From positions 310,001-374,000 of the forward strand of contig JBLDXI010000043.1 of the NCBI GenBank assembly GCA_047495785.1: DNA of 64,000 nucleotides, in the 5' to 3' direction. The position numbers and the translations under genes were made by a program. Origin of the DNA: Lepidodermella squamata. Taxonomy: Eukaryota; Animalia; Gastrotricha. The notes under the pieces are model-generated. The model worked only from the letters and a program-made list of their open reading frames with translations. It made no database searches and was not told where the DNA came from. The first letter of the stretch is position 1. Every line of letters starts with the position of its first letter. Below are positions 1-11,170 of this stretch, in pieces.

Positions 1-3000
1 GTGACGCTGGACCCCCGGGCCCAGGCATTAGGGGTGAAAAGGGTTCTCGTGGGCCTCGTGGGACGAAGGCTTGCTGTACTAAACCACCTGTTGAGCGATC
101 CTACGGCCGAACGCCCAGCCTATACGTTGTGCACACGCAGTCGACAAGTGACGTAAGTCCTAATTCATCGACCTAATTTCGGACATCTCTATTTTGATCA
201 TTTGAATTTAATTTAGGAAGCTACGTGTCTGGACGAAAATGCTGAGCTGTTGTGGACCGGCTATTCTTTCTTGTATGGGGATATCAATCGAGTTGCCACT
301 GGCCAGGATTTAGGTACGATTTTTCGCTCATAGTAGTATTGATCGTCCTTTGCCCTATTCGTTTTAGGCCCGATTTAGGCGTAATTTAAATTTCTTTTCA
401 AATTCTGATTATTTGTTTATAAATCGTACATTTTCCATATTTTTTATACTATTCGAAGAAATATCGAGTAAATGTTTGAAATTGAAAACAATGGACGCAA
501 CTTTTTTCCGCAGCAAATAACTTTTTCTCGCAGTATAATTTTAAATAGCGCAAATTGCCTTGCAAATTTTACCAAACGATTTCTAGTTCAAAACTGAGAA
601 GGAAAATATATCGCTTTTAGTCAAGGGTCAAATGTCACAATTTTTTGATCGAATTATTCGAATAAGAGCTAATTTATGTCCTATTCTACAACAAGTTGAA
701 AGGATGTTTGGGCAGTGGTCATTGTTGTATTCAATGATTTTCTATTTCTGTCCAAGACCCCTGAAACGGTTGTCTAGAATCGCTCACTCAAAACGCCATC
801 GACTAATAAGCCAGGAAAGTCCTTTGACACTATAGCTCTTCCCAGGAACGTTCGCTTGGATACCTTGGATAACTTGAACGTTGAAAGTATTGCATACTTC
901 TCTCCTCCCGGGAGCCGGCAAAAAACTCGGGCTGCTCACCAATCTTATGTAGACCAACAAAAGTTTTCCATCGGAAGTTCAGTTCAGTTCCGTTGAAAGC
1001 GTTAAGATGTAATAAGTAGTTAATAAAAGTAAAGAATAATGACTGGTAAAACCAAATAACCAGCGACAAGGGAGCCCGTGTCACAGGCCGCGTGCGAGAA
1101 CAAAGAAAACGCTGTAATCCTGTGGGAAGTGGGAAGAGTGGGAATGACACATTTTCTGCTTCAATTTTGAGAAAGGAATCGTTTAGAGAAATTTGCAACA
1201 AAATTTGCGCTAATTTAGGTTATACTGCGAGAAAAAGTCGATTTGCTGTGGAGAAAAGTCCTTACTGCGCGAAAAAGTGTGTTACTGCGAAAAAAAGATA
1301 TTTACTGCGGGATAAAGTATTTTTCAAAACAATTTTCGAGGGAAATTCGAAATTTAAATTCCGAAATTTCGAAATTTCAAAAATAGGAATTCCTTTATTT
1401 TTGACCCATTTTGGCGCAATTTCGAAAAATCCTAATTTGAAAATTAGATTTTCATTGAAATTGTTATTATTTCTGACTCATGATTTTTTCGAAATCCAGG
1501 TCCATAATTTTCAGTGATTGACCTTATTCTTTCAATGCAAATTGTTTAGGTCGACCTGGGTCATGCATTCCGCGCCTTGACCCGATTCCGTACACCGACT
1601 GCTCGCCTGGCATGCCATGCGTGACGAACCAGCGATCCATGCAAGCCATTTGGCTGCTCGCCCAGCAAAACGTCAGCGCCATCAGCCAGATCCCGTTCTC
1701 AAACCTGTCCAGCTACGTGTCGCGATGTGCGGTTTGCATAGCGAAATCGCCCGTGATCACGCTGCACCGAGCGACGAAATGCCCGGCGGATACGCGCAAG
1801 CTGTGGAGCGGCTACAGCTTGGCCATGTTCACGAGCTCGATGCTGTCCGTCTCGGCTGATTTGTCGCATTCTGGGTCGTGTTTGCAGAAGTTTCAAACGG
1901 GCCTCGCTATCGAGTGCGACACGTCGCAGAATTGCCGGCGCTACAACGATTTCCGCAGGTGGGCATTTTTCATTTTTCTACCTAAAATTAGGAAAAAACA
2001 CTAACTTTTCCCGAAAACATGATAATGCATATTAGACAAAATTATTCGGAAATTTTGAATTTTTTTTGAAATTTCAAGACAAATTCCCATTCACTCGAAT
2101 GATTATGAAATTTTCGCAAATTCAGGTCGAATCCCGCAATGTCCCGCCTTGTTGAGGTTTATATTTGATGGCTATTAAGGATGATAAAATTCAGTACTGT
2201 CGCGATACGATTTCTCGATCGAAAACCAAATTCTGTGAAATAATCTGATTGTAATTTTCAATATTGAATGGGCTGTCACTTGGCCGAAATTTCGGGTTCC
2301 AGCGCTAAATTTGAGTATTTTCCTTGAATGCTCTCGTATTTTTCCGGGATTTCTAGAATTTCAACCTCGAAACTTCGAACAATTCTAAAATTGGTTAATC
2401 ATTCATTGTTGACGTTTTCGAACAGACTTGACCCCTCGGCTACTATTATAGGGATTGGCTATTATTAGCGATTGGGCCACTTTCCTCGTTCCTCGTCTTT
2501 CTTAGAACCTCATTTTTCATCATCAATTCAGCTTAATCATCAATTCTCGGTTGCTCATTATTCCCTCGGTTATCTTTAAATTTTAAAATTTTAATTTTTT
2601 TCAATTTTCAAAAATCGCGCAACCATTCGTGATTTTTTTGCCGATTTGATGCATTTGTCTGATTAGAGTCGATATGGTGTTGCAATGGATTTCACGGTGC
2701 TATCAAAATATTAGAAATATCTCAGAAATAGGAATTGCATTGGTTTTCAACCAACTAATCAAGTCCCGAACCCTGGGATTTTTTTCATTTTTCTTCATCG
2801 ATTAGAATCAGGTTATTTTTCCTGTGAAATTTTCTTTGAAATCACGCTCTCAGTGTAGTCAAAGTTTAGCGGAATCAGCAAAGCCAAATTGGAACATTTT
2901 TTCATATTGGAATAGCTCGGAAATTTAAATCAGGACATCAGGAATCAGAAAATGCAGTTAATTATGACGAAATTCAGCGTACATTTTTCTGGATATTTTT

Positions 3001-5221
3001 ACTTGCTGTCTTTATTTTTTGAGAAATTTATTTTGACAATTTAACAATCTTGTGGCTTCGATTTTCACGAGAACATCACTTGATTTAGATCGCGATCATT
3101 TTTCTTAGATTCAAACCCCGACAAATCGCTTTGGATATTGACTATTGTCATAATCTGTTGTCTAATTTTACGATTTATTTCCCCTAAAACAGCCATTGGT
3201 TGCACGGCCTGAACGATCGAACGCCAGGCGAGGCTGAGAACTGCGTAGTCTGCGTCGACGAGCGAACAAACGACTTCGACCGCGACCTGCCGCGGCCGCG
3301 CATCTACGCCGAACACTACCAATCACCCGCCGCACCCATCAACCCATGCTCATCCGCCCCGGGCACGTTTCCAATCATGACAGCCGGCTATTCGTTACTG
3401 CACCTCGAAGACACGCGAGCCGTAGTCCAAGACCTAGGCTCAGCCGGGTCTTGCCTACCCCGCTTCTCACCTGTCCCATTCTTAACCTGCCCGACTTTCG
3501 GATCCTGCTACGCCAAGGAGCGCCAGACCAAGGCGGCGTGGCTGAGCGGGCTATGGGCGCCTCCGATGGGTGCTTCGAAGAGTTCGATGAACCTAGCGAC
3601 AAGTCCGAGTGTCCTATCTCGATGCAGTATCTGTATATCGGACGCGCCTGTTGTGACGATTCACAGCCATACTACGCTGGTTCCGACGTGCCCGGCTAAG
3701 GCGGGCAAATGGGTGGCGCTGTGGAGTGGTTACAGCTATTTGGGCCATTTCACGAATGCGGCCGGTGGGCAGCAGCCGTTGGATAGTCCTGGGTCGTGCC
3801 TTCGCGAGTTCATGACTCCGGTTTACTTTGAGTGTGCTGGCGCGACGGGCGAGTGCCGATTCCAGGCTGATCAACACGAGTAAGTTGATAGACTGATTAA
3901 ACTAGATCGCTGTGAAAGCAAACACAGGGTGGATTAAGACTAGGGGAATAAATATAGGAAGGGAGGGAACGAACAAGGGGTAATTGAAAGGATAGGAAGG
4001 GAAAGGAAGAACAGGGTCCTCTGGAAAAAGAAGGTTAATACTGTTGGGCGATGTAGAGAATAATAGAATGTAATTTGCAATATGAGCAATGAAGACAAGG
4101 TGAAAGATGGAGAGTCATGAAGAGGATGGATAGGTTTTAATGGTGAGATATGAGGAGAGAGAACGCATGCCTGAGCCCTGAGCTTCATGAGAAATCCGGA
4201 ATATGAAGTTTTGACGGAATAGGGAGAGGGAATTGTTTAAAAAAAGAAGTAATGCGAAATGGAAAAGGAAAGGGAGGGGAATAGGGTAATGGAAAAGGAA
4301 AGTAAGGATAAAATAGATACGAAAAGAAGGGAAGGGGAGGGAAGGCAAACGAAAGAAAAGGGAAGGAAGGGGAAAGGGAAAGAAACGAGAAGAGAATGCC
4401 CCTTGAAGAAACGAAAAAAGCGGAAGGTGTTGAACGCGCGTAAGAGGAAGAATTGAGAAGACAGGTTTATTACAAAAAGTAAAGGACAAGAATAAATGTT
4501 TTTTACTTGGCTACTCGTCACCTTGAAACTGGCGTAAACAAACCGAGCTATTCAATGGCGCAAACGGATAGTAATGTACAGAGAGCTATATGAAGTTTTT
4601 GTAGCCGGAGTAATCTGAGAATCATAGAGAAAAAAATGACCAGAGTAAGCACTCAAGCTAAAATTGCAGAATCTTAATTTTTATTAAAAGTTGAATTCTG
4701 TTGTTCACCAAATTTTGCATGCATATAGAACGCGAGCTGCTCTTTCACGCGGTTTAAGATTTGAGGTGGGCAACCCGTCTGTTGTTACGATACCAAAACC
4801 TCGTTTTCACTATGGTTTCATTTGATTTTGATGAGATCAAGACTGAGCAGCAATTGCCCACCTCAAAACCTATCCTATGTGAAAGAGCAGCTCGCGTTCT
4901 ATATGCATGCAAAATTTGGTGAAAAACGGAGATAAGTTAACTTTGAAACAAAAATGAAGATTCTGAAATTTTAACCTTGAGTGCTCACTCTAGTCATTTT
5001 TTTCTCTATGCTCAGAATGGAGGTCCCAAGCGAACCTTATGAGAAAACTTTGATTAACAATAACTTTGCTTTCTGTTAGTTTCTGGCTTGCCGCATCGAA
5101 CAGTGCTGAAGCGCCGGGTTTGCAGCGCAAAATGCGTCAAACTTTGACGATGGATCGAGGCTCGCAAACTGCCGGTCAAATCAGCCGCTGTGTTGTCTGT
5201 AAAATGGTCATCAACAACTAA
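1..5221 (+). CDS. Type IV collagen alpha chain, 3' part (end of Gly-X-Y region plus two tandem NC1 domains); exons <1-152, 217-313, 1550-1958, 3193-3879, 5080-5221
   Basis: Starts with GPPGPGIRGEKGSRGPRG. NC1/C4 motifs follow four times: (VVHTQS..LWTGYSFL..GQDLGRPGSC..WLL..SRCAVC), (LWSGYSL..SGSCLQKF..HWL..CVVC), (EHYQS..GYSLL..QDLGSAGSCLPRF..WLS..SRCSIC), (IHSHT..LWSGYSYL..LDSPGSCLREF..FWL..SRCVVCKM*). All introns are GT-AG and phase-consistent; stop TAA at 5219-5221. Confidence 0.92.
500..1320. repeat. Foldback/MITE-like element in a collagen intron: ~80-bp imperfect inverted arms (~500-585 and ~1175-1260) plus a 20-bp tandem array (5 units, 1221-1320)
   Basis: The reverse complement of ACTTTTTCTCGCAGTATAATTTTAAATAGCGCAAATTGCCTTGCAAATTT matches AAATTTGCAACAAAATTTGCGCTAATTTAGGTTATACTGCGAGAAAAAGT. 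A TACTGCG..AAAAG unit repeats with period 20. Confidence 0.65.
3940..4470 (+). repeat. Purine-rich low-complexity tract (GA-rich) in a collagen intron
   Basis: Long runs of G/A (ggaaaaggaaagggaggggg...). The ORFs here are compositional artefacts. Confidence 0.8.
4614..5016. mobile_element. MITE with ~150-bp terminal inverted repeats, in the last collagen intron
   Basis: CATAGAGAAAAAAATGAC...CACCAAATTTTGCATGCATATAGAACGCGAGCTGCTCTTTCAC is mirrored by GTGAAAGAGCAGCTCGCGTTCTATATGCATGCAAAATTTGGTG...GTCATTTTTTTCTCTATG. No coding capacity. Confidence 0.8.
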
Positions 5222-5472
5222 CCATTCGCAAGTAAAAACCCATGGATTAATGGCCAACTTCTTATAACCGCGATGAGTTAACTGAATCTCTTATCTCTGT
5301 ATACTACTGATTGACGAATTGTTACCGATTGTCTAATTGTTGCACCCTTGTAAAATGAACATTTTCTTGGCCGTTATGAAAAAAATAAAACTGAACTTTA
5401 TTTCAACGCATTTAAGGGAAAAATGAAATCGCTTCACTCTCATAATGAAAGCGAGAACAAATTATATCTGTT

Positions 5473-6218
5473 CTAAACTCTTATTGGTACTGATCGTCTT
5501 GGGTTGCAGTCTCCTGCTGATGACCAAGTAGCATTTGAGAGGCAATTGATTTCGGCACTTCCGACCAGCTGAAAATTGTCGTTGCACGTGACCTTTCCGG
5601 AAGATCCGACGGAAGTCCCGTCTACAGACACTACACCATTCAAAACAAGCGGCGGCTGACCACAGTGGCGTCGATCTTTAAAATAATACGATGCGATGCA
5701 GAAACCAGGCTCGGTCCATTTACCATCCGGCTTGCACATAACTTGAACCCGGCCTAGTATCCGATACCCAGGGTGGCAATGCAGGACCCAAACATCGGGA
5801 AAAGCCCTCATCAAACTGCCTGCACTTCTCAGCTTCCCATTATTGATTTGCGGCAATGCTCCACAGCCTGAAACAGAAGATGGGAAAAGATTAAATTGAG
5901 CAAATGTTGGACCAGCCGATATTTACTTATCGGGACGCAGCGACTGTTGACAGATGGTTCTAATGGTGGCATGCAAGTCGAAACTGTTGAAGCGGACGTG
6001 TTATTGTAGCCTTCATCGCAGGTAATTTTCACGACTTTCCCACTTTCTATCGAGTCGCCAGGTTCTAGAAATTTACCAACATCCGCCGATGTCTTCGGGT
6101 CAAGCTCCGTGAGATAGCCATTGATAATCGAGGGGACAGCGCAATAATGTTCATAAGCTCGAACGGTAAACAAGCTTGGTATTAGGATTAAAATGACTTC
6201 AGAAAAGGGGAGCTTCAT
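5473..6218 (-). CDS. Secreted protein with three CCP/Sushi modules (exons 6218-5927, 5867-5473)
   Basis: Signal peptide MKLPFSEVILILIPSLFTVRA. CCP patterns: C..P...NG...C..GY...C....W....C (e.g. CHPGYRILGRVQVMCKPDGKWTEPGFC; CGQPPLVLNG..CNDNFQLVGSAEINCLSNATWS). 59-nt GT-AG intron; downstream AATAAA on the minus strand. Confidence 0.88.
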
Positions 6219-6508
6219 TTTACTACAGAAATAAAAAACGCTTTTAAGCTCATGTTTATTTTTGTAAAACATGTCAAAAGTTGTTACACGAGTAAGAAAA
6301 AGCGTGTGCGCCCGTAAATTGAACTCTAAAGCATGATTAGTTAGGGAGTTGTTCAACAAATGACCGCTAACAAGTGAAAAGTGGGGATTGGCAGAACTTC
6401 TGACCTCGTGATGCCGATTTCAAGGTCAATAAACGAGGAATTGAACGATATCAAAGTTATCAGGGCCGCTTTAAGGTTTTCACGTGCAAAATACAAATAT
6501 CTAAATTC

Positions 6509-7111
6509 TATACAATATCTGGGAGCTTTGTAGCGGATAGCGGAAAATATTCGCCTGAAGGCCAGCTATGGAGACCTGAGGCGCAGCCGAAGGTCGGAAT
6601 AGCGGCCTGAATAGTACGCAAGAAGAATTCCCAGTCAACCAGCCAGTCACCCAGCGATGAAACGGTGTCGGCTGGCGACTTGTTTGCTCTAACATCCTCT
6701 CTTGGCGCCACACTGATTCTCGAGTTGATCTGAGCCCGCCCCAGAGCAAGATCGAGCGCAAGTTGCGATCGACGATGATTCTCGGCTCCGTTGGATTTTC
6801 TGCTGAATCGAACCTGACCCAGGCGAATCATCGGCCCACTTGTTCCCGTGTCTTTGCTGCATATTCTTTAACCTTGTTAATTTTCTCGCAATTACGGAAT
6901 AATAAAATTTAGGGGGTCGCGGGGGTTTCGGCGCCTCAGTATTTTGTGAGTTTTGTTTCCGTGCTCAAATAAATCGAAAATTGGGGTGAATGCTGCCAAA
7001 ATTTCAAGCCATGACTTGAGGATAGCATGATATCCTGGTTCAAACAGCCCGGGATAGCAGAAAATATTCCGGGCTGTTTTACGGCGTATTTTCCACTATG
7101 ATCCGGATAAC
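6509..7111. mobile_element. Internally deleted copy of the dispersed repeat at 12168-13165
   Basis: Near-identical ends (TATACAATATCTGGGAGCTTTGTAGCGGATAG... and ...CCACTATGATCCGGATAAC). Lacks roughly the segment 12270-12615 of the longer copy. Confidence 0.85.
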
Positions 7112-7466
7112 TAAAGATATTGAGTTTTTGCATCAATTACATCATCACCTACATCATATATTGCATAATAATCCCATAATTCATAATTGCATCATAATTG
7201 CATAATAACAGTTCGAATAAATTCACCATAGGAAGATCGCTTGTTTCCTATCCGTTACAGTCTTGTCTATGATATAGAAAAGACAACCAAATGGTCTAAT
7301 ATCAAACATGAGGGCATTGAACAAAGGAATTTAATGCATATAGGAGTAAAATAAGGAAAAATCACTTGATCAGAAACTGATTTTATTGCTGGGATAATTG
7401 ATGGCTTGGTCATGAAATCACGCCAGTTAATAGACTGCGCACATTTTTCGACACAATTTCCCATGA

Positions 7467-9492
7467 TCAATTAGCAGGAACTACCGAACAAACGCGGTTA
7501 ACGTAGTTGAAACCACTGCAACCGTTGATGTCTGTCGTAGTCGACGAGGTTTTTCGGTTGTTCACAACATTGAACTTCCAGTCGTAAGTTGGCGCTATGC
7601 CGGCATTGTCCCAACTGCAGTAGTTGCCGCACTCCGCGCCGTTGTACATCTTCATGGCTACAGCATGCTCGATTGTACGCGAAGTGCCATCTCGGAACAA
7701 ACAGTTCGCCTCGCGTCTATCAGGGACTGGTTTACCATTGGCCTGCTGCCGCTGTCTTCGCATCCAATCAACAGCCTCGGCCTGCTTAGATAGCAAAACT
7801 TGAACGCCGTGTCTCGTATTCGCCTGCCAACTCCAAACATCCTCACATGTAACATCTGGATTGATTTTACCCTTGGTAAGTTGGAAAACCCCGTAACCGT
7901 CGTCGTACGATCTAAGTGGGTATCCAGATTGTTCGAATTGCTTCGCACCAGTTTCGTGAATCCCAATGTACTCGGCGTACCACAGTTTTGTCAACGATCT
8001 TACGTAGATGATAAAGTCACTGCGAATTGGCTGGGAGCCGAGAATTTTAAAGCTCAAGCTGCCTGAAACAGCGCCACTCCACGTTAGAACAGCATCGCCT
8101 CCCTGAATGTTGGAACCACCGAATTCGGAGGCTATGTTCCAAGCCGTCCCAGTGTAGCTCACAGTTCGCTTCATGCAAACACCGTCCTGTTTGGTAGGAC
8201 TCAACGTGAACTGCCACTTCAGCGCTGTTGTTTCGTCGCAGAGTTGCGCTTTCAAACTCGGAAATTTCGCTTCCTTTGTTATGTAAATCGTATCGCCATT
8301 TCTGACATCTCGACCCTGGCTGATGACTTTGACGGTTGGACTTGCGGCATTCGATGAGCTCTCGCATGGAGACGGGCACTGCAGGCGGAAATCCCACGCC
8401 GTGCCAGTTGTGCCCTCGCAGTTTGGTTCGACGTTGATTCTCAGTTCGGAGGATGCACTCGTATCTACTTTTGTTTTCTTCCAGTCGCCAGTACCTGTGA
8501 TTTTGAAATACCATAATCAGTTTGGATTGAGAAAACTTTCAATTCGACCTTCAAGAGCGAACTTTAGTGATCTCTCGAATTTCGCCTAGTTTTCGGCGAT
8601 TTGAATTCATATTATTCAAAAAAGGTAAATTGATGATAAAAAGCAGCCCACCTACGCATCCACTGTCGAAAACTAGCTGGTCATCAGAGAAAGCCGTGAC
8701 TCGATCTTTCACGCTGTAAGTCTGATAATTCAACTCGAGCTTGCCGCCACCATTTTGGCCAAGGTAGTACCGCCTCGTCACCGGCGTATCAGCGCCCGAC
8801 ACTTGGCTGTCATCGCAATCAGCACAGCTGACGGAACACGGCGAATTCGGGTCTGCCTCGCATTGCGAACCACAGGCTATCGGCATGTCAATCGGGGTCG
8901 CCCCAGCTGAGCCTTCCTTACCGTCCTTTGATATGTAATAAGGCCGCCAAGATGTAGCTTGACACGACGACTGGTCATCGACGCACATCGACACAGGGAT
9001 CCCGACATCGACCTTGTAAATCACGCTTCGGTCGCTCAACTTTGATACAATCATCAATCCCGAGTTGAATTTACCAGCCAGTGACAATGGAATGGCGTTG
9101 ATTGTTTTCGAATCTCCGAATCTGATGCCGATAGCAGGGTCGCTATCGGGCGATCTTTTCAATCGCTGCATTGTAGGCCCCGGTAGCCAAACGTACATGA
9201 AACTGAGCCGGCCAGCCTCGGCAACTTGAGATGAATAATCGATGCGAACGCCCACTCCCGCTAGTGATTCGCGACTGCTATCCAGAGGGGCCAATTCCGG
9301 CGGTCCTTGTTTCAGGCTTTCAGCGGAGACCGCAAAGCTGCCGTTGGGAAATTCCGCGCTCTCGGTGAGGAAATCTTCAATGTTTTGTTTCTTTTCGCTG
9401 CTTTGCGTTAGAATAACAGCTAAGGCTACAATACCAGCAGCTAGAACAATCGCAACGATGACGCTTGTCACTATAATGCAGGCTTTTCCCAT
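7467..9492 (-). CDS. ~622-aa type II membrane-anchored protein with a Cys-containing ectodomain and a C-terminal lysozyme-fold / lytic-transglycosylase (SLT)-like domain (exons 9492-8652, 8494-7467)
   Basis: N-terminal anchor IIVTSVIVAIVLAAGIVALAVIL. A 157-nt phase-1 GT-AG intron joins the two ORFs in frame (..DSGCV|GTGDWKK..) with no stops. SLT-like motifs occur in the expected order: IGIHET, GYGVFQLT, WQANTRHGVQVL, AMKMYNG, YVNRV. Confidence 0.8.
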
Positions 9493-11170
9493 TTTAAAAT
9501 ATAAAACCTTGTGAATTGAAATGTTTGGTTCAAGGTCGAATATCCGATGAAATAGATGATAGAAAATACTGGGCAAAAATATTGAGGACTGAATTGCGGA
9601 AAATCAACAACACCGATTGTTATAGGAATGTAGGTGGTGTTTTGCATAGTGAACTCAATGATGAATCGGCTATTTTTTGCTGATTAATTTGATTAATTTG
9701 ACGGAGATCAATGAAAAATATGTGCAAAAACTACTACCACAACAAAATTCACCACCATATTATCATCGACGCAGTAAATAAAAATGGACTTCGACTCTCA
9801 AATCCGGCCTACAATGAAGATCGACCTTTCCTTAGAGGGAGTGACTTCCTAGCCTAGGAGAATTTTTGGTTTCGAATTTATGGGATCGGATTCTTGAGTT
9901 TAATTTCCCGAGACCTTTCGGGCTGATGTGTGGGTGCCCCTTTAGCCCGTAACTTTGCACACTGGCTGGCTTTTTGGCTATGATATTAAGAAGTTTTATT
10001 GCCCTGTGAAATTATCATAATACTCGCTCTTATCTGAGCTTTTTAAATTTTTCCTTGGAGAAACTTTAAAGCAGCTGGTTACGCCCAAATGCCGCTCGCT
10101 TTTATCGGGACAATTTTGGTATTCCATGGAAAAATCAGCGGCTATCTATATTATCTATAGTGTGAAAACAATAGTTAGACGTTCAAACCACGAAGGTAGC
10201 TTCAGGTCATGCTAACAACGACACTTCAAAACGCCCGGGTATCAAATGTTGTAATGCTTAAAGAATTATACAATTTAATCACAGCTAATGTTGAAGATGC
10301 TAGATGTTCGTCAATTCTAGGACAATCTTAGTTTTGCCAGGCCAAAGTTGAAACAGTTGAAGGGTGACTGAGAGACGGTTTCATACTGAAATGAAAAAAA
10401 AACAAATTATCCATGAAATTAATCGAAGAACGTTTCAATTGCCATCGGAACTACGGCAACTTCAATTTGCGTGAATAAATATTGCCGCAACTTCAAAACT
10501 TCAAAAAAGCTTAGGAGGGCTTAACTTTCTAGTAAAAACAACAACTTGCTATAATTAGCTATTCAAAAGAAATAAGATGGCAGCCGAACTTTCATTTGTT
10601 GAGATTGCAAATCAATGAATCAGCATGGGGACTCTTTAATGCCAACGAGGGTATCGAACTTTCAAGCTAACGATGCCCTCGCAGCTCACAGTATTGGTTT
10701 CCTGTACGCCGGCATGTGGGCCTTGCGACGGAACTACTGCAGACTGTAGACCTTCAGAAGAGACATCATTTTCCAATGCACCATTTTCCTGGCAAAAATA
10801 ATGCAGTCGCACCTGGTTGAAAAATGAATTGACCGATAATATTGAAATGTTTCGAATCCCACATTAGATAACTTATTATTCTTCGAATTATTGTAAATTC
10901 TCTACATCAAGATGGATTTCGTCCACCGTTTTGTCATCTGTAGCTTTGCTTTGCCAATCAGCAATCAGGAAACATCAGAAACTGTAACGTCAACCGAAAC
11001 GAGATACCGCATGGGTCTTACAAACTAATCTTTCCTGCTTTCCTGCTCGCAGTATCACACCCAAGTGCTCAACAAGATAAAAGACAATAAAATGGAGATA
11101 TGACCTCTGCCTGCCAATGCAGTTTGTATTCTTCCTGCTCTTAGAGGCTGACATTTTTTGCTTGAGGACA

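What the first reader, a model, noticed from the sequence alone, without database searches (positions are those of the whole stretch)
1..5221. Type IV collagen carrying two tandem NC1 domains (four C4 half-domains)
Seen: after the last Gly-X-Y triplets the spliced frame encodes four complete C4-type repeats, each closing with a C-x2-C motif, joined by a short linker (DERTNDFDRDLPRPR). Established: a canonical collagen IV NC1 has two C4 repeats; three NC1s trimerise and two trimers form the hexamer that cross-links basement membrane. Inference: one protomer would carry six NC1 units. It could form an intramolecular 'hexamer' (capping the network) or branch it, a different matrix geometry. The first NC1 is more degenerate than the second.
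Basis: partly seen in the sequence, partly recalled or inferred. Interest (0 to 1): 0.8.

Follow-up and report, generated by a model that had tools for sequence, protein, structure and literature searches.

The report
Short collagen with doubled NC1 end-knob
This is the tail end of an intact, conserved animal gene for a short relative of basement-membrane (type IV) collagen. Its chain ends in two complete copies, not one, of the globular NC1 knob that normally joins such collagens. I found no paper describing this layout, and its expression and function are untested here.

Summary
Five GT/AG exons (3-152, 217-313, 1550-1958, 3193-3879, 5080-5221) splice into one frame. That frame runs: end of a Gly-X-Y helix, a Cys-Cys knot, NC1a, a 16-residue linker, NC1b, stop. 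It holds four C4 repeats and 24 cysteines in the 4x6 pattern.

Evidence that the gene is real:
- All 20 exonic allele differences listed for a DNA run are synonymous.
- An ortholog (68% identical) lies on metagenome scaffolds from two assemblies. There the helix, NC1a, the linker and most of NC1b are one uninterrupted ORF with four Pfam C4 hits. The doubled knot therefore does not depend on the disputed splice.
- That ortholog sits head-to-head with a second doubled-NC1 gene.
- The scan has noted two more doubled-NC1 genes elsewhere in this genome (s1-422040, s1-430153), so this layout was found before on other DNA.

Limits:
- No RNA data could be laid on this gene. Exon 4 is in phase, so an exon-4-skipped single-NC1 isoform is not excluded here.
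- The ortholog's helix is short (about 330 residues), so this is a short-chain relative, not a classical collagen IV.
- Both NC1 copies lack the chloride-switch and sulfilimine residues of collagen IV hexamers.

Verdict: a new variant of a known kind.

The parts
3..152 (+). Exon (5' end cut by the window): last Gly-X-Y triplets, Cys-Cys knot (72-77), start of NC1a (TPSLYVVHTQSTSD from 111)
   Evidence: donor GTAAGT at 153; aligns to the ortholog
217..313 (+). Exon: first Cys and the W-x-G-Y-S core of C4 repeat 1 (NC1a)
   Evidence: Pfam C4 E 0.0015; AG at 215-216, GT at 314
1550..1958 (+). Exon: rest of C4 repeat 1 (to CAVC at 1726-1737) and body of C4 repeat 2 (1738-1958)
   Evidence: Pfam C4 3.4e-25, 2 stretches; 8 allele differences, all synonymous
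3193..3879 (+). Exon 4 (687 nt, phase 2 at both ends): tail of NC1a with its closing CVVC (3194-3253), linker (3254-3301), C4 repeat 3 (3302-3634), body of C4 repeat 4 (3635-3879)
   Evidence: Pfam C4 3e-35; 75% identical to P0005:544-770; 11 allele differences, all synonymous as a haplotype
5080..5221 (+). Last exon: tail of C4 repeat 4 with closing CVVC, C-terminus ...KMVINN, stop TAA 5219-5221
   Evidence: intron at the same place and phase in the ortholog, C-terminus ...KLLINN conserved; AATAAA at 5384
153..216 (+). Intron 1 (64 nt), absent from the ortholog
314..1549 (+). Intron 2 (1,236 nt), absent from the ortholog; one DNA contig lacks 1,210 nt of it
1959..3192 (+). Intron 3 (1,234 nt), between the NC1a body and its tail; absent from the ortholog; same position and phase within the C4 repeat as intron 4
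3880..5079 (+). Intron 4 (1,200 nt), shared with the ortholog (60 nt there); holds a purine-rich stretch and a very high-copy palindromic repeat (4614-5016)

Best explanation
The window holds the 3' part of a functional gene for a secreted, short-chain, collagen-IV-like chain whose C-terminus is a doubled NC1. The order is: triple helix, Cys-Cys knot, NC1a (two C4 subdomains, shortened last loop), a conserved 16-residue linker, NC1b (two C4 subdomains, full length). It belongs to a small family. An A-type ortholog and a head-to-head B-type partner lie in a metagenome organism, and scan notes report two further loci in this genome. Shown: the architecture, its integrity, and purifying selection on both copies and on the linker. 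Inferred: three chains (possibly A and B types together, as their head-to-head pairing suggests) wind into a protomer locked by the Cys-Cys knot. Its end then carries six NC1 domains, or twelve C4 subdomains, which is the material for two six-subdomain rings. NC1a and NC1b are only about 29% identical to each other yet each is about 70% conserved between species, so they probably do different jobs. I think it most likely that NC1a, next to the helix, selects and registers the chains, and that NC1b, the more canonical copy that keeps the long interface loop, makes the contacts between protomers. Both copies lack the chloride-ring and sulfilimine residues, so any trimer-trimer joining would use other chemistry than in classical collagen IV.
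For: Canonical splice sites and an open frame. Pfam C4 on four exons. Two full NC1 hits. 24 of 24 cysteines. All 20 listed exonic allele differences synonymous. The ortholog P0005 has helix, NC1a, linker and NC1b in one ORF with 4 Pfam C4 stretches, seen in two separate metagenome assemblies. Non-synonymous difference is 0.19-0.29 against saturated synonymous sites in every domain, and the linker is 74% identical. The last intron and the C-terminus are conserved. NC1a alone folds with pLDDT 90.8 and matches solved NC1 domains at TM 0.80-0.84. The head-to-head partner also has NC1a plus NC1b. The ortholog has a signal peptide and a short helix.
Against: No RNA evidence for this gene: the only run found holds DNA. 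Exon 4 is 687 nt and in phase, and joining exon 3 directly to exon 5 gives an intact single NC1 with a very canonical ...RSFWL... junction. The 5' part of the gene lies outside the window. The division of labour between NC1a and NC1b and the ring geometry are inference only; AlphaFold2 of the tandem gave NC1a pLDDT under 50. The domain tree is unresolved.
Confidence: 0.72

Rival explanations
1. Exon 4 is an alternative (cassette) exon in this species. The gene would make both a single-NC1 chain (exon 3 joined to exon 5) and a doubled-NC1 chain, so the doubled knot is a regulated isoform and not the constant product.
For: Exon 4 is 687 nt with phase 2 at both ends. Skipping it keeps the frame and recreates a canonical S-F-W-L junction. 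Introns 3 and 4 lie at homologous places of C4-2 and C4-4.
Against: The ortholog has no intron 3, so there the doubled form is the only product of normal splicing. The NC1a tail and the linker inside exon 4 are conserved. A hybrid of NC1a body and NC1b tail has no counterpart in the relatives.
Confidence: 0.15
2. One reading: the three NC1b domains fold back face-to-face onto the three NC1a domains, forming an internal hexamer that ends network growth.
For: Six NC1 per protomer equals the content of a hexamer. NC1a has a remodelled interface loop, with a deletion where Lys211 would be, conserved in A and B types.
Against: Only about 13-16 free residues join NC1a to the first strand of NC1b. 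In solved single-chain NC1 trimers, the C-terminus of one NC1 is joined to the N-terminus of its ring neighbour by a linker like the native inter-C4 one, on the helix side of the ring (PMC8093946). Reaching the far pole of an inverted second ring would need a much longer tether; this rests on my recollection of the trimer's dimensions. The residues that drive face-to-face joining in collagen IV are missing.
Confidence: 0.08
3. Assembly artefact, dead gene, or two genes wrongly joined by the reader.
For: The genome may come from an amplified single-animal library, by the scan's unverified identification. No expression is shown here.
Against: NC1a and NC1b are only about 29% identical, so this is not a collapsed or duplicated assembly. 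The same order is seen in two independent metagenome assemblies. Polymorphism is synonymous-only. Exon 4 starts with the tail that NC1a needs.
Confidence: 0.04

Closest known systems
Classical collagen IV (COL4A1/A2 type; solved NC1 hexamers 1LI1, 1M3D, 5NAX)
   Same: C-terminal NC1 made of two C4 repeats with 12 Cys. NC1b is 37-46% identical to canonical NC1s, and the NC1a model matches them at TM 0.80-0.84. Interrupted Gly-X-Y helix. Head-to-head gene pair in the ortholog's locus.
   Different: Two NC1 in tandem instead of one. A helix of about 330 residues instead of about 1,400 (ortholog). A Cys-Cys knot between the helix and NC1. No Asp/Glu78, Arg/Lys179, Phe/Tyr64 plus Asn66, Met93 or Lys211.
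Spongin short-chain collagens / short-chain C4 collagens of invertebrates (Aouacheria 2006 as cited in 10.1101/2021.10.08.463732; Fidler 2017, PMC5395295)
   Same: Truncated collagenous domain with an NC1-type end. NC1b groups with short unnamed NC1 proteins (P0033, P0036, P0055) in the tree.
   Different: Those are described with a single NC1 and without the HSQ motif. Here NC1a of the ortholog keeps HSQ (HTQ in the window, HYQ in NC1b), and the NC1 is doubled.
Engineered single-chain NC1 trimers (6MPX, 6WKU, 8TXN; PMC8093946, PMC6527180)
   Same: Several NC1 domains in tandem on one polypeptide. They show that tandem NC1s can fold and sit side by side in one six-subdomain ring.
   Different: These are man-made, have three NC1 per chain with very short linkers, and no triple helix. 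Here there are two NC1 per chain, a linker about 11 residues longer, and three chains per protomer.
Stand-alone NC1 gene of ctenophores (PMC5395295)
   Same: Shows that the NC1 module has been reshuffled in animal evolution.
   Different: It is a separate gene without a collagen helix, not a second NC1 on a collagen chain.

Membership tests
Collagen IV (classical) | NC1 domain: two C4 repeats, 12 conserved Cys | tested here: met
   Met twice over: Pfam C4 on exons 2-5, two NC1 HMM hits, 24 Cys, NC1a fold TM 0.83 to 5NAX/1T60
Collagen IV (classical) | Long (about 1,400-residue) interrupted triple helix | tested here: not met
   The window shows only the last triplets. The ortholog's whole chain is 853 aa with about 330 residues of interrupted helix
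Collagen IV (classical) | N-terminal 7S domain | tested here: inconclusive
   Outside the window. The ortholog has four Cys just after its signal peptide, but no 7S comparison was made
Collagen IV (classical) | Chloride switch (Arg76, Asp/Glu78, Glu175) and chloride-binding residues (Arg/Lys179; Phe/Tyr64, Asn66, Tyr/His189), criteria of PMC6527180 Fig. 13 | tested here: not met
   NC1a: R, M, E (ortholog L, M, E), Ser179, Asp64. NC1b: R, T, E, Thr179, Thr64, Pro66
Collagen IV (classical) | Sulfilimine pair Met93-Lys211 | tested here: not met
   NC1a: Ile or gap at 93, and the loop around 211 is deleted. NC1b: Lys/Asn at 93, Thr/Arg at 211
Collagen IV (classical) | Head-to-head gene pair | tested here: inconclusive
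   Present for the ortholog: start codons 293 nt apart on opposite strands. In the window the upstream region is not included
Spongin-type short-chain collagens | Truncated collagen domain plus NC1 | tested here: met
   Ortholog architecture
Spongin-type short-chain collagens | No HSQ motif at the start of NC1 (as stated in 10.1101/2021.10.08.463732) | tested here: inconclusive
   Window NC1a HTQ, ortholog NC1a HSQ, NC1b HYQ in both

The most novel reading that the evidence does not exclude
A natural counterpart of the engineered single-chain NC1: a family of short collagens whose protomers end in twelve C4 subdomains (two rings). This would give a two-valent or otherwise new network node, held together without chloride ring or sulfilimine bond, and so a matrix geometry not known from any basement-membrane collagen.
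Probability: 0.25. Interest if true: 0.75.

Novelty: new variant of a known kind. Interest (0 to 1): 0.6.

Why it matters
The NC1 domain decides which collagen IV chains combine and how protomers join end to end; all described natural chains that I could find carry one. A conserved chain with two diverged NC1 domains shows that this connector can be multiplied in nature. It offers a natural test of ideas so far explored only with engineered single-chain NC1 constructs: how C4 subdomains fill rings, and what is needed for trimer-trimer joining without chloride or sulfilimine chemistry. It would also add to the picture of matrix diversification in a barely studied animal group. The scan's unverified lead is a gastrotrich.

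Tried and rejected
No splice joints could be read.
- Word-index protein searches with exon 4, with the ortholog's NC1 part and with the B-type gene found no further doubled-NC1 proteins.
- Two scans of JGI metagenome contigs found nothing.
- The ESM Atlas gave only ordinary collagen IV and short-chain clusters, all below score 0.9.
- AlphaFold2 of NC1a-linker-NC1b failed for NC1a, because all canonical homologs aligned to NC1b. The relative geometry is therefore unknown.
- Introner idea: the three ~1.2-kb introns are not alike.
- Synteny between the window and the metagenome scaffolds: none beyond the gene itself.
- Domain tree: NC1a of A and B types group only weakly (support 68). Holding NC1a and NC1b of the A genes together is not rejected (p-AU 0.79), so the order of duplications is open.
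- Literature: no paper holds 'tandem NC1'. 'Two NC1 domains' gave one irrelevant review. The main collagen IV evolution papers do not mention a doubled NC1.
- Intronic ORFs have no Pfam match.
Full report
**What is in the sequence.** Three-frame translation of window 1-5400, with the splice-site contexts, gives five plus-strand exons: 3-152, 217-313, 1550-1958, 3193-3879 and 5080-5221. All are bounded by GT...AG. They join into one open frame of 494 residues that runs off the window's 5' end. In order, the product is:
- about six final Gly-X-Y triplets;
- a Cys-Cys pair (nt 72-77);
- a first NC1 (NC1a, C4 repeats 1 and 2, closing CAVC and CVVC);
- the 16-residue linker VDERTNDFDRDLPRPR (3254-3301);
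- a second NC1 (NC1b, repeats 3 and 4, closing CSIC and CVVC);
- a stop at 5219-5221.

An AATAAA follows at 5384, and a convergent Sushi-repeat gene begins on the minus strand at about 5473. Pfam C4 hits exons 2, 3, 4 and 5. A model built from nine canonical NC1 domains finds two full-length NC1 hits, 127 and 162 bits. All 24 canonical cysteines are present.

**Is it a living gene?** The one sequencing run that holds this stretch is DNA: its contigs cover the introns. It comes from a heterozygous sample, or from the source sample itself. Of the differences listed, 20 fall in exons. Nineteen are synonymous on their own, and the two in codon 316 together still give Leu, so all 20 are silent as haplotypes. 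Eight lie in exon 3 (NC1a) and eleven in exon 4 (NC1a tail, linker, NC1b). No RNA run was offered, so expression and the splice joints themselves remain unshown.

**The decisive relative.** An exhaustive HMMER search of 1.84 billion representative proteins with exon 4 gave one close hit, P0005 (E 6e-141), and then only ordinary single-NC1 proteins at E 4e-35 or weaker.
- P0005 lies on an ENA metagenome scaffold (L001). Near-identical copies lie on scaffolds of the same and of a second assembly (L002, L003).
- There, the collagen helix, the Cys-Cys knot, NC1a, the linker and NC1b up to ...DQH are one uninterrupted 2.3-kb ORF, with four Pfam C4 stretches (E 2e-69).
- A 60-nt intron follows at exactly the place and phase of window intron 4. 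A last exon then ends ...CKLLINN, against ...CKMVINN in the window.
- With a 38-codon signal-peptide exon, the full chain is 853 residues, of which only about 330 are interrupted Gly-X-Y.

In that organism the doubled NC1 needs no splicing between the copies. It also shows that the doubled form is the normal product in a relative.

Window and ortholog are 68% identical over 491 residues. Synonymous sites are saturated and non-synonymous difference is 0.19-0.29. NC1a (70%), the linker (74%) and NC1b (68%) are about equally conserved.

**A family, not a one-off.** On L001-L003 a second collagen gene lies head-to-head with the first, with start codons 293 nt apart, as in COL4A1/A2 pairs. It too reads helix, C-x2-C, a degenerate NC1a (Cys65 and Cys71 lost), a linker and NC1b. 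The scan's notes report two more doubled-NC1 short collagens on other pieces of this genome (s1-422040, said there to be expressed; s1-430153). I did not check those. Outside these loci I found none:
- none among the 150 best representatives;
- none in three word-index searches;
- none in two metagenome scans.

**How the two copies differ.** NC1a and NC1b are about 29% identical to each other. NC1b is the more canonical copy (37-46% identity to collagen IV NC1s). NC1a lacks about 20 residues between the W-L motif and the last C-x2-C, the loop that carries Lys211 in collagen IV. This deletion is shared by the A and B types. With a deep alignment, NC1a of the ortholog still folds with pLDDT 90.8 and matches solved NC1 domains at TM 0.80-0.84.

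I used the numbering of human alpha1 NC1, checked on the motifs ASR76ND78 and SM93A and on P0007, and the criteria of PMC6527180. By these, neither copy has:
- the chloride switch (position 78 is Met or Thr);
- the group-1 chloride residue (179 is Ser or Thr);
- the group-2 set (64 and 66 differ);
- the sulfilimine pair (93 and 211 differ or are deleted).

Arg76 (except in the ortholog's NC1a) and Glu175 remain. The start motif is HTQ in the window and HSQ in the ortholog for NC1a, and HYQ for NC1b.

**What it most likely does.** Shown: the architecture, its conservation, and a signal peptide in the ortholog. Inferred: a secreted short collagen whose three chains are locked by the Cys-Cys knot and end in six NC1 domains. 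Solved engineered single-chain NC1 trimers (6MPX, 6WKU, 8TXN) and their description (PMC8093946) show two things. An NC1 trimer is a ring of six C4 subdomains. And tandem NC1s can be joined C-terminus to N-terminus by linkers like the native inter-C4 ones. Here the last Cys of NC1a and the His of NC1b's first strand are 21 residues apart, against 10 in those linkers, so about 11-16 residues are free.

Twelve subdomains per protomer could fill two rings. Whether these are an NC1a ring and an NC1b ring, or mixed rings, cannot be told. Because the two copies are old, diverged and separately conserved, I favour a division of labour: NC1a for chain registration next to the helix, and NC1b for contacts between protomers, by chemistry other than the chloride ring and sulfilimine bond. 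AlphaFold2 on the tandem gave confident NC1b but NC1a under pLDDT 50, so it says nothing on geometry.

**What remains open.** Exon 4 is 687 nt with phase 2 on both sides. Joining exon 3 directly to exon 5 keeps the frame and gives ...RSFWL..., a very canonical junction. Introns 3 and 4 also sit at homologous places of repeats 2 and 4, and only intron 4 is shared with the ortholog, which lacks introns 1-3. A single-NC1 isoform in this species is therefore possible (I give it about 15%), and only RNA can settle it. The order of events (tandem duplication versus the A/B gene split) is unresolved. The domain tree joins the NC1a copies only weakly, and it does not reject NC1a plus NC1b of the A genes as one clade.

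**Organism.** The organism is not identified here. Other agents' notes suggest the gastrotrich Lepidodermella squamata, whose genome paper does not mention collagen.

**Novelty.** No paper in the library holds 'tandem NC1'. The collagen IV evolution papers I opened describe single NC1 domains, a stand-alone NC1 gene in ctenophores, and short-chain spongin-type collagens, but no doubled NC1. I rate it a new variant of a known kind, already met twice by this scan on other DNA of the same genome.

Noticed in passing
window 4501-5040 (intron 4): A self-complementary repeat of about 400 nt (4614-5016) with summed contig word depth up to about 13,500 in the DNA run, against about 80 in the flanks. 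It is a very high-copy element, probably a small transposon.
   Followed up: partly
window 4001-4500: A strongly purine-rich stretch (GC skew 0.61, AT skew 0.44) inside intron 4. Its minus-strand ORFs are low-complexity and have no Pfam match.
   Followed up: partly
window 319-1530 and 3887-4177: Single DNA contigs at about half the local depth join 319 to 1530 (1,210 nt of intron 2 missing) and 3887 to 4177 (289 nt of intron 4 missing). The introns look size-polymorphic between haplotypes. No terminal inverted repeat was seen at the 320/1529 ends.
   Followed up: partly
window introns 1959-3192 and 3880-5079; L001 9331-9390: Introns 3 and 4 lie at homologous positions of C4 repeats 2 and 4, just before the x-W-L motif, both phase 2. 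The metagenome ortholog has only the second of them and none of introns 1-3. This means either intron loss there or gain here.
   Followed up: partly
L001 3619-6576 (minus) and 6870-9532 (plus); same in L002, L003: A head-to-head pair of doubled-NC1 short collagen genes with start codons 293 nt apart. The B-type NC1a has lost two cysteines and is missed by Pfam.
   Followed up: partly
window 72-77; L001_A and L001_B at the helix/NC1a border: A conserved Cys-Cys (A type) or C-x2-C (B type) lies right after the last Gly-X-Y triplet. It resembles the cystine knots that lock other collagen trimers and is not a feature of classical collagen IV.
   Followed up: no
window 5473-6359, minus strand: A convergent neighbour gene with Sushi/CCP repeats (Pfam E 5e-18). 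Its 3' end lies about 250 nt from the collagen stop.
   Followed up: no
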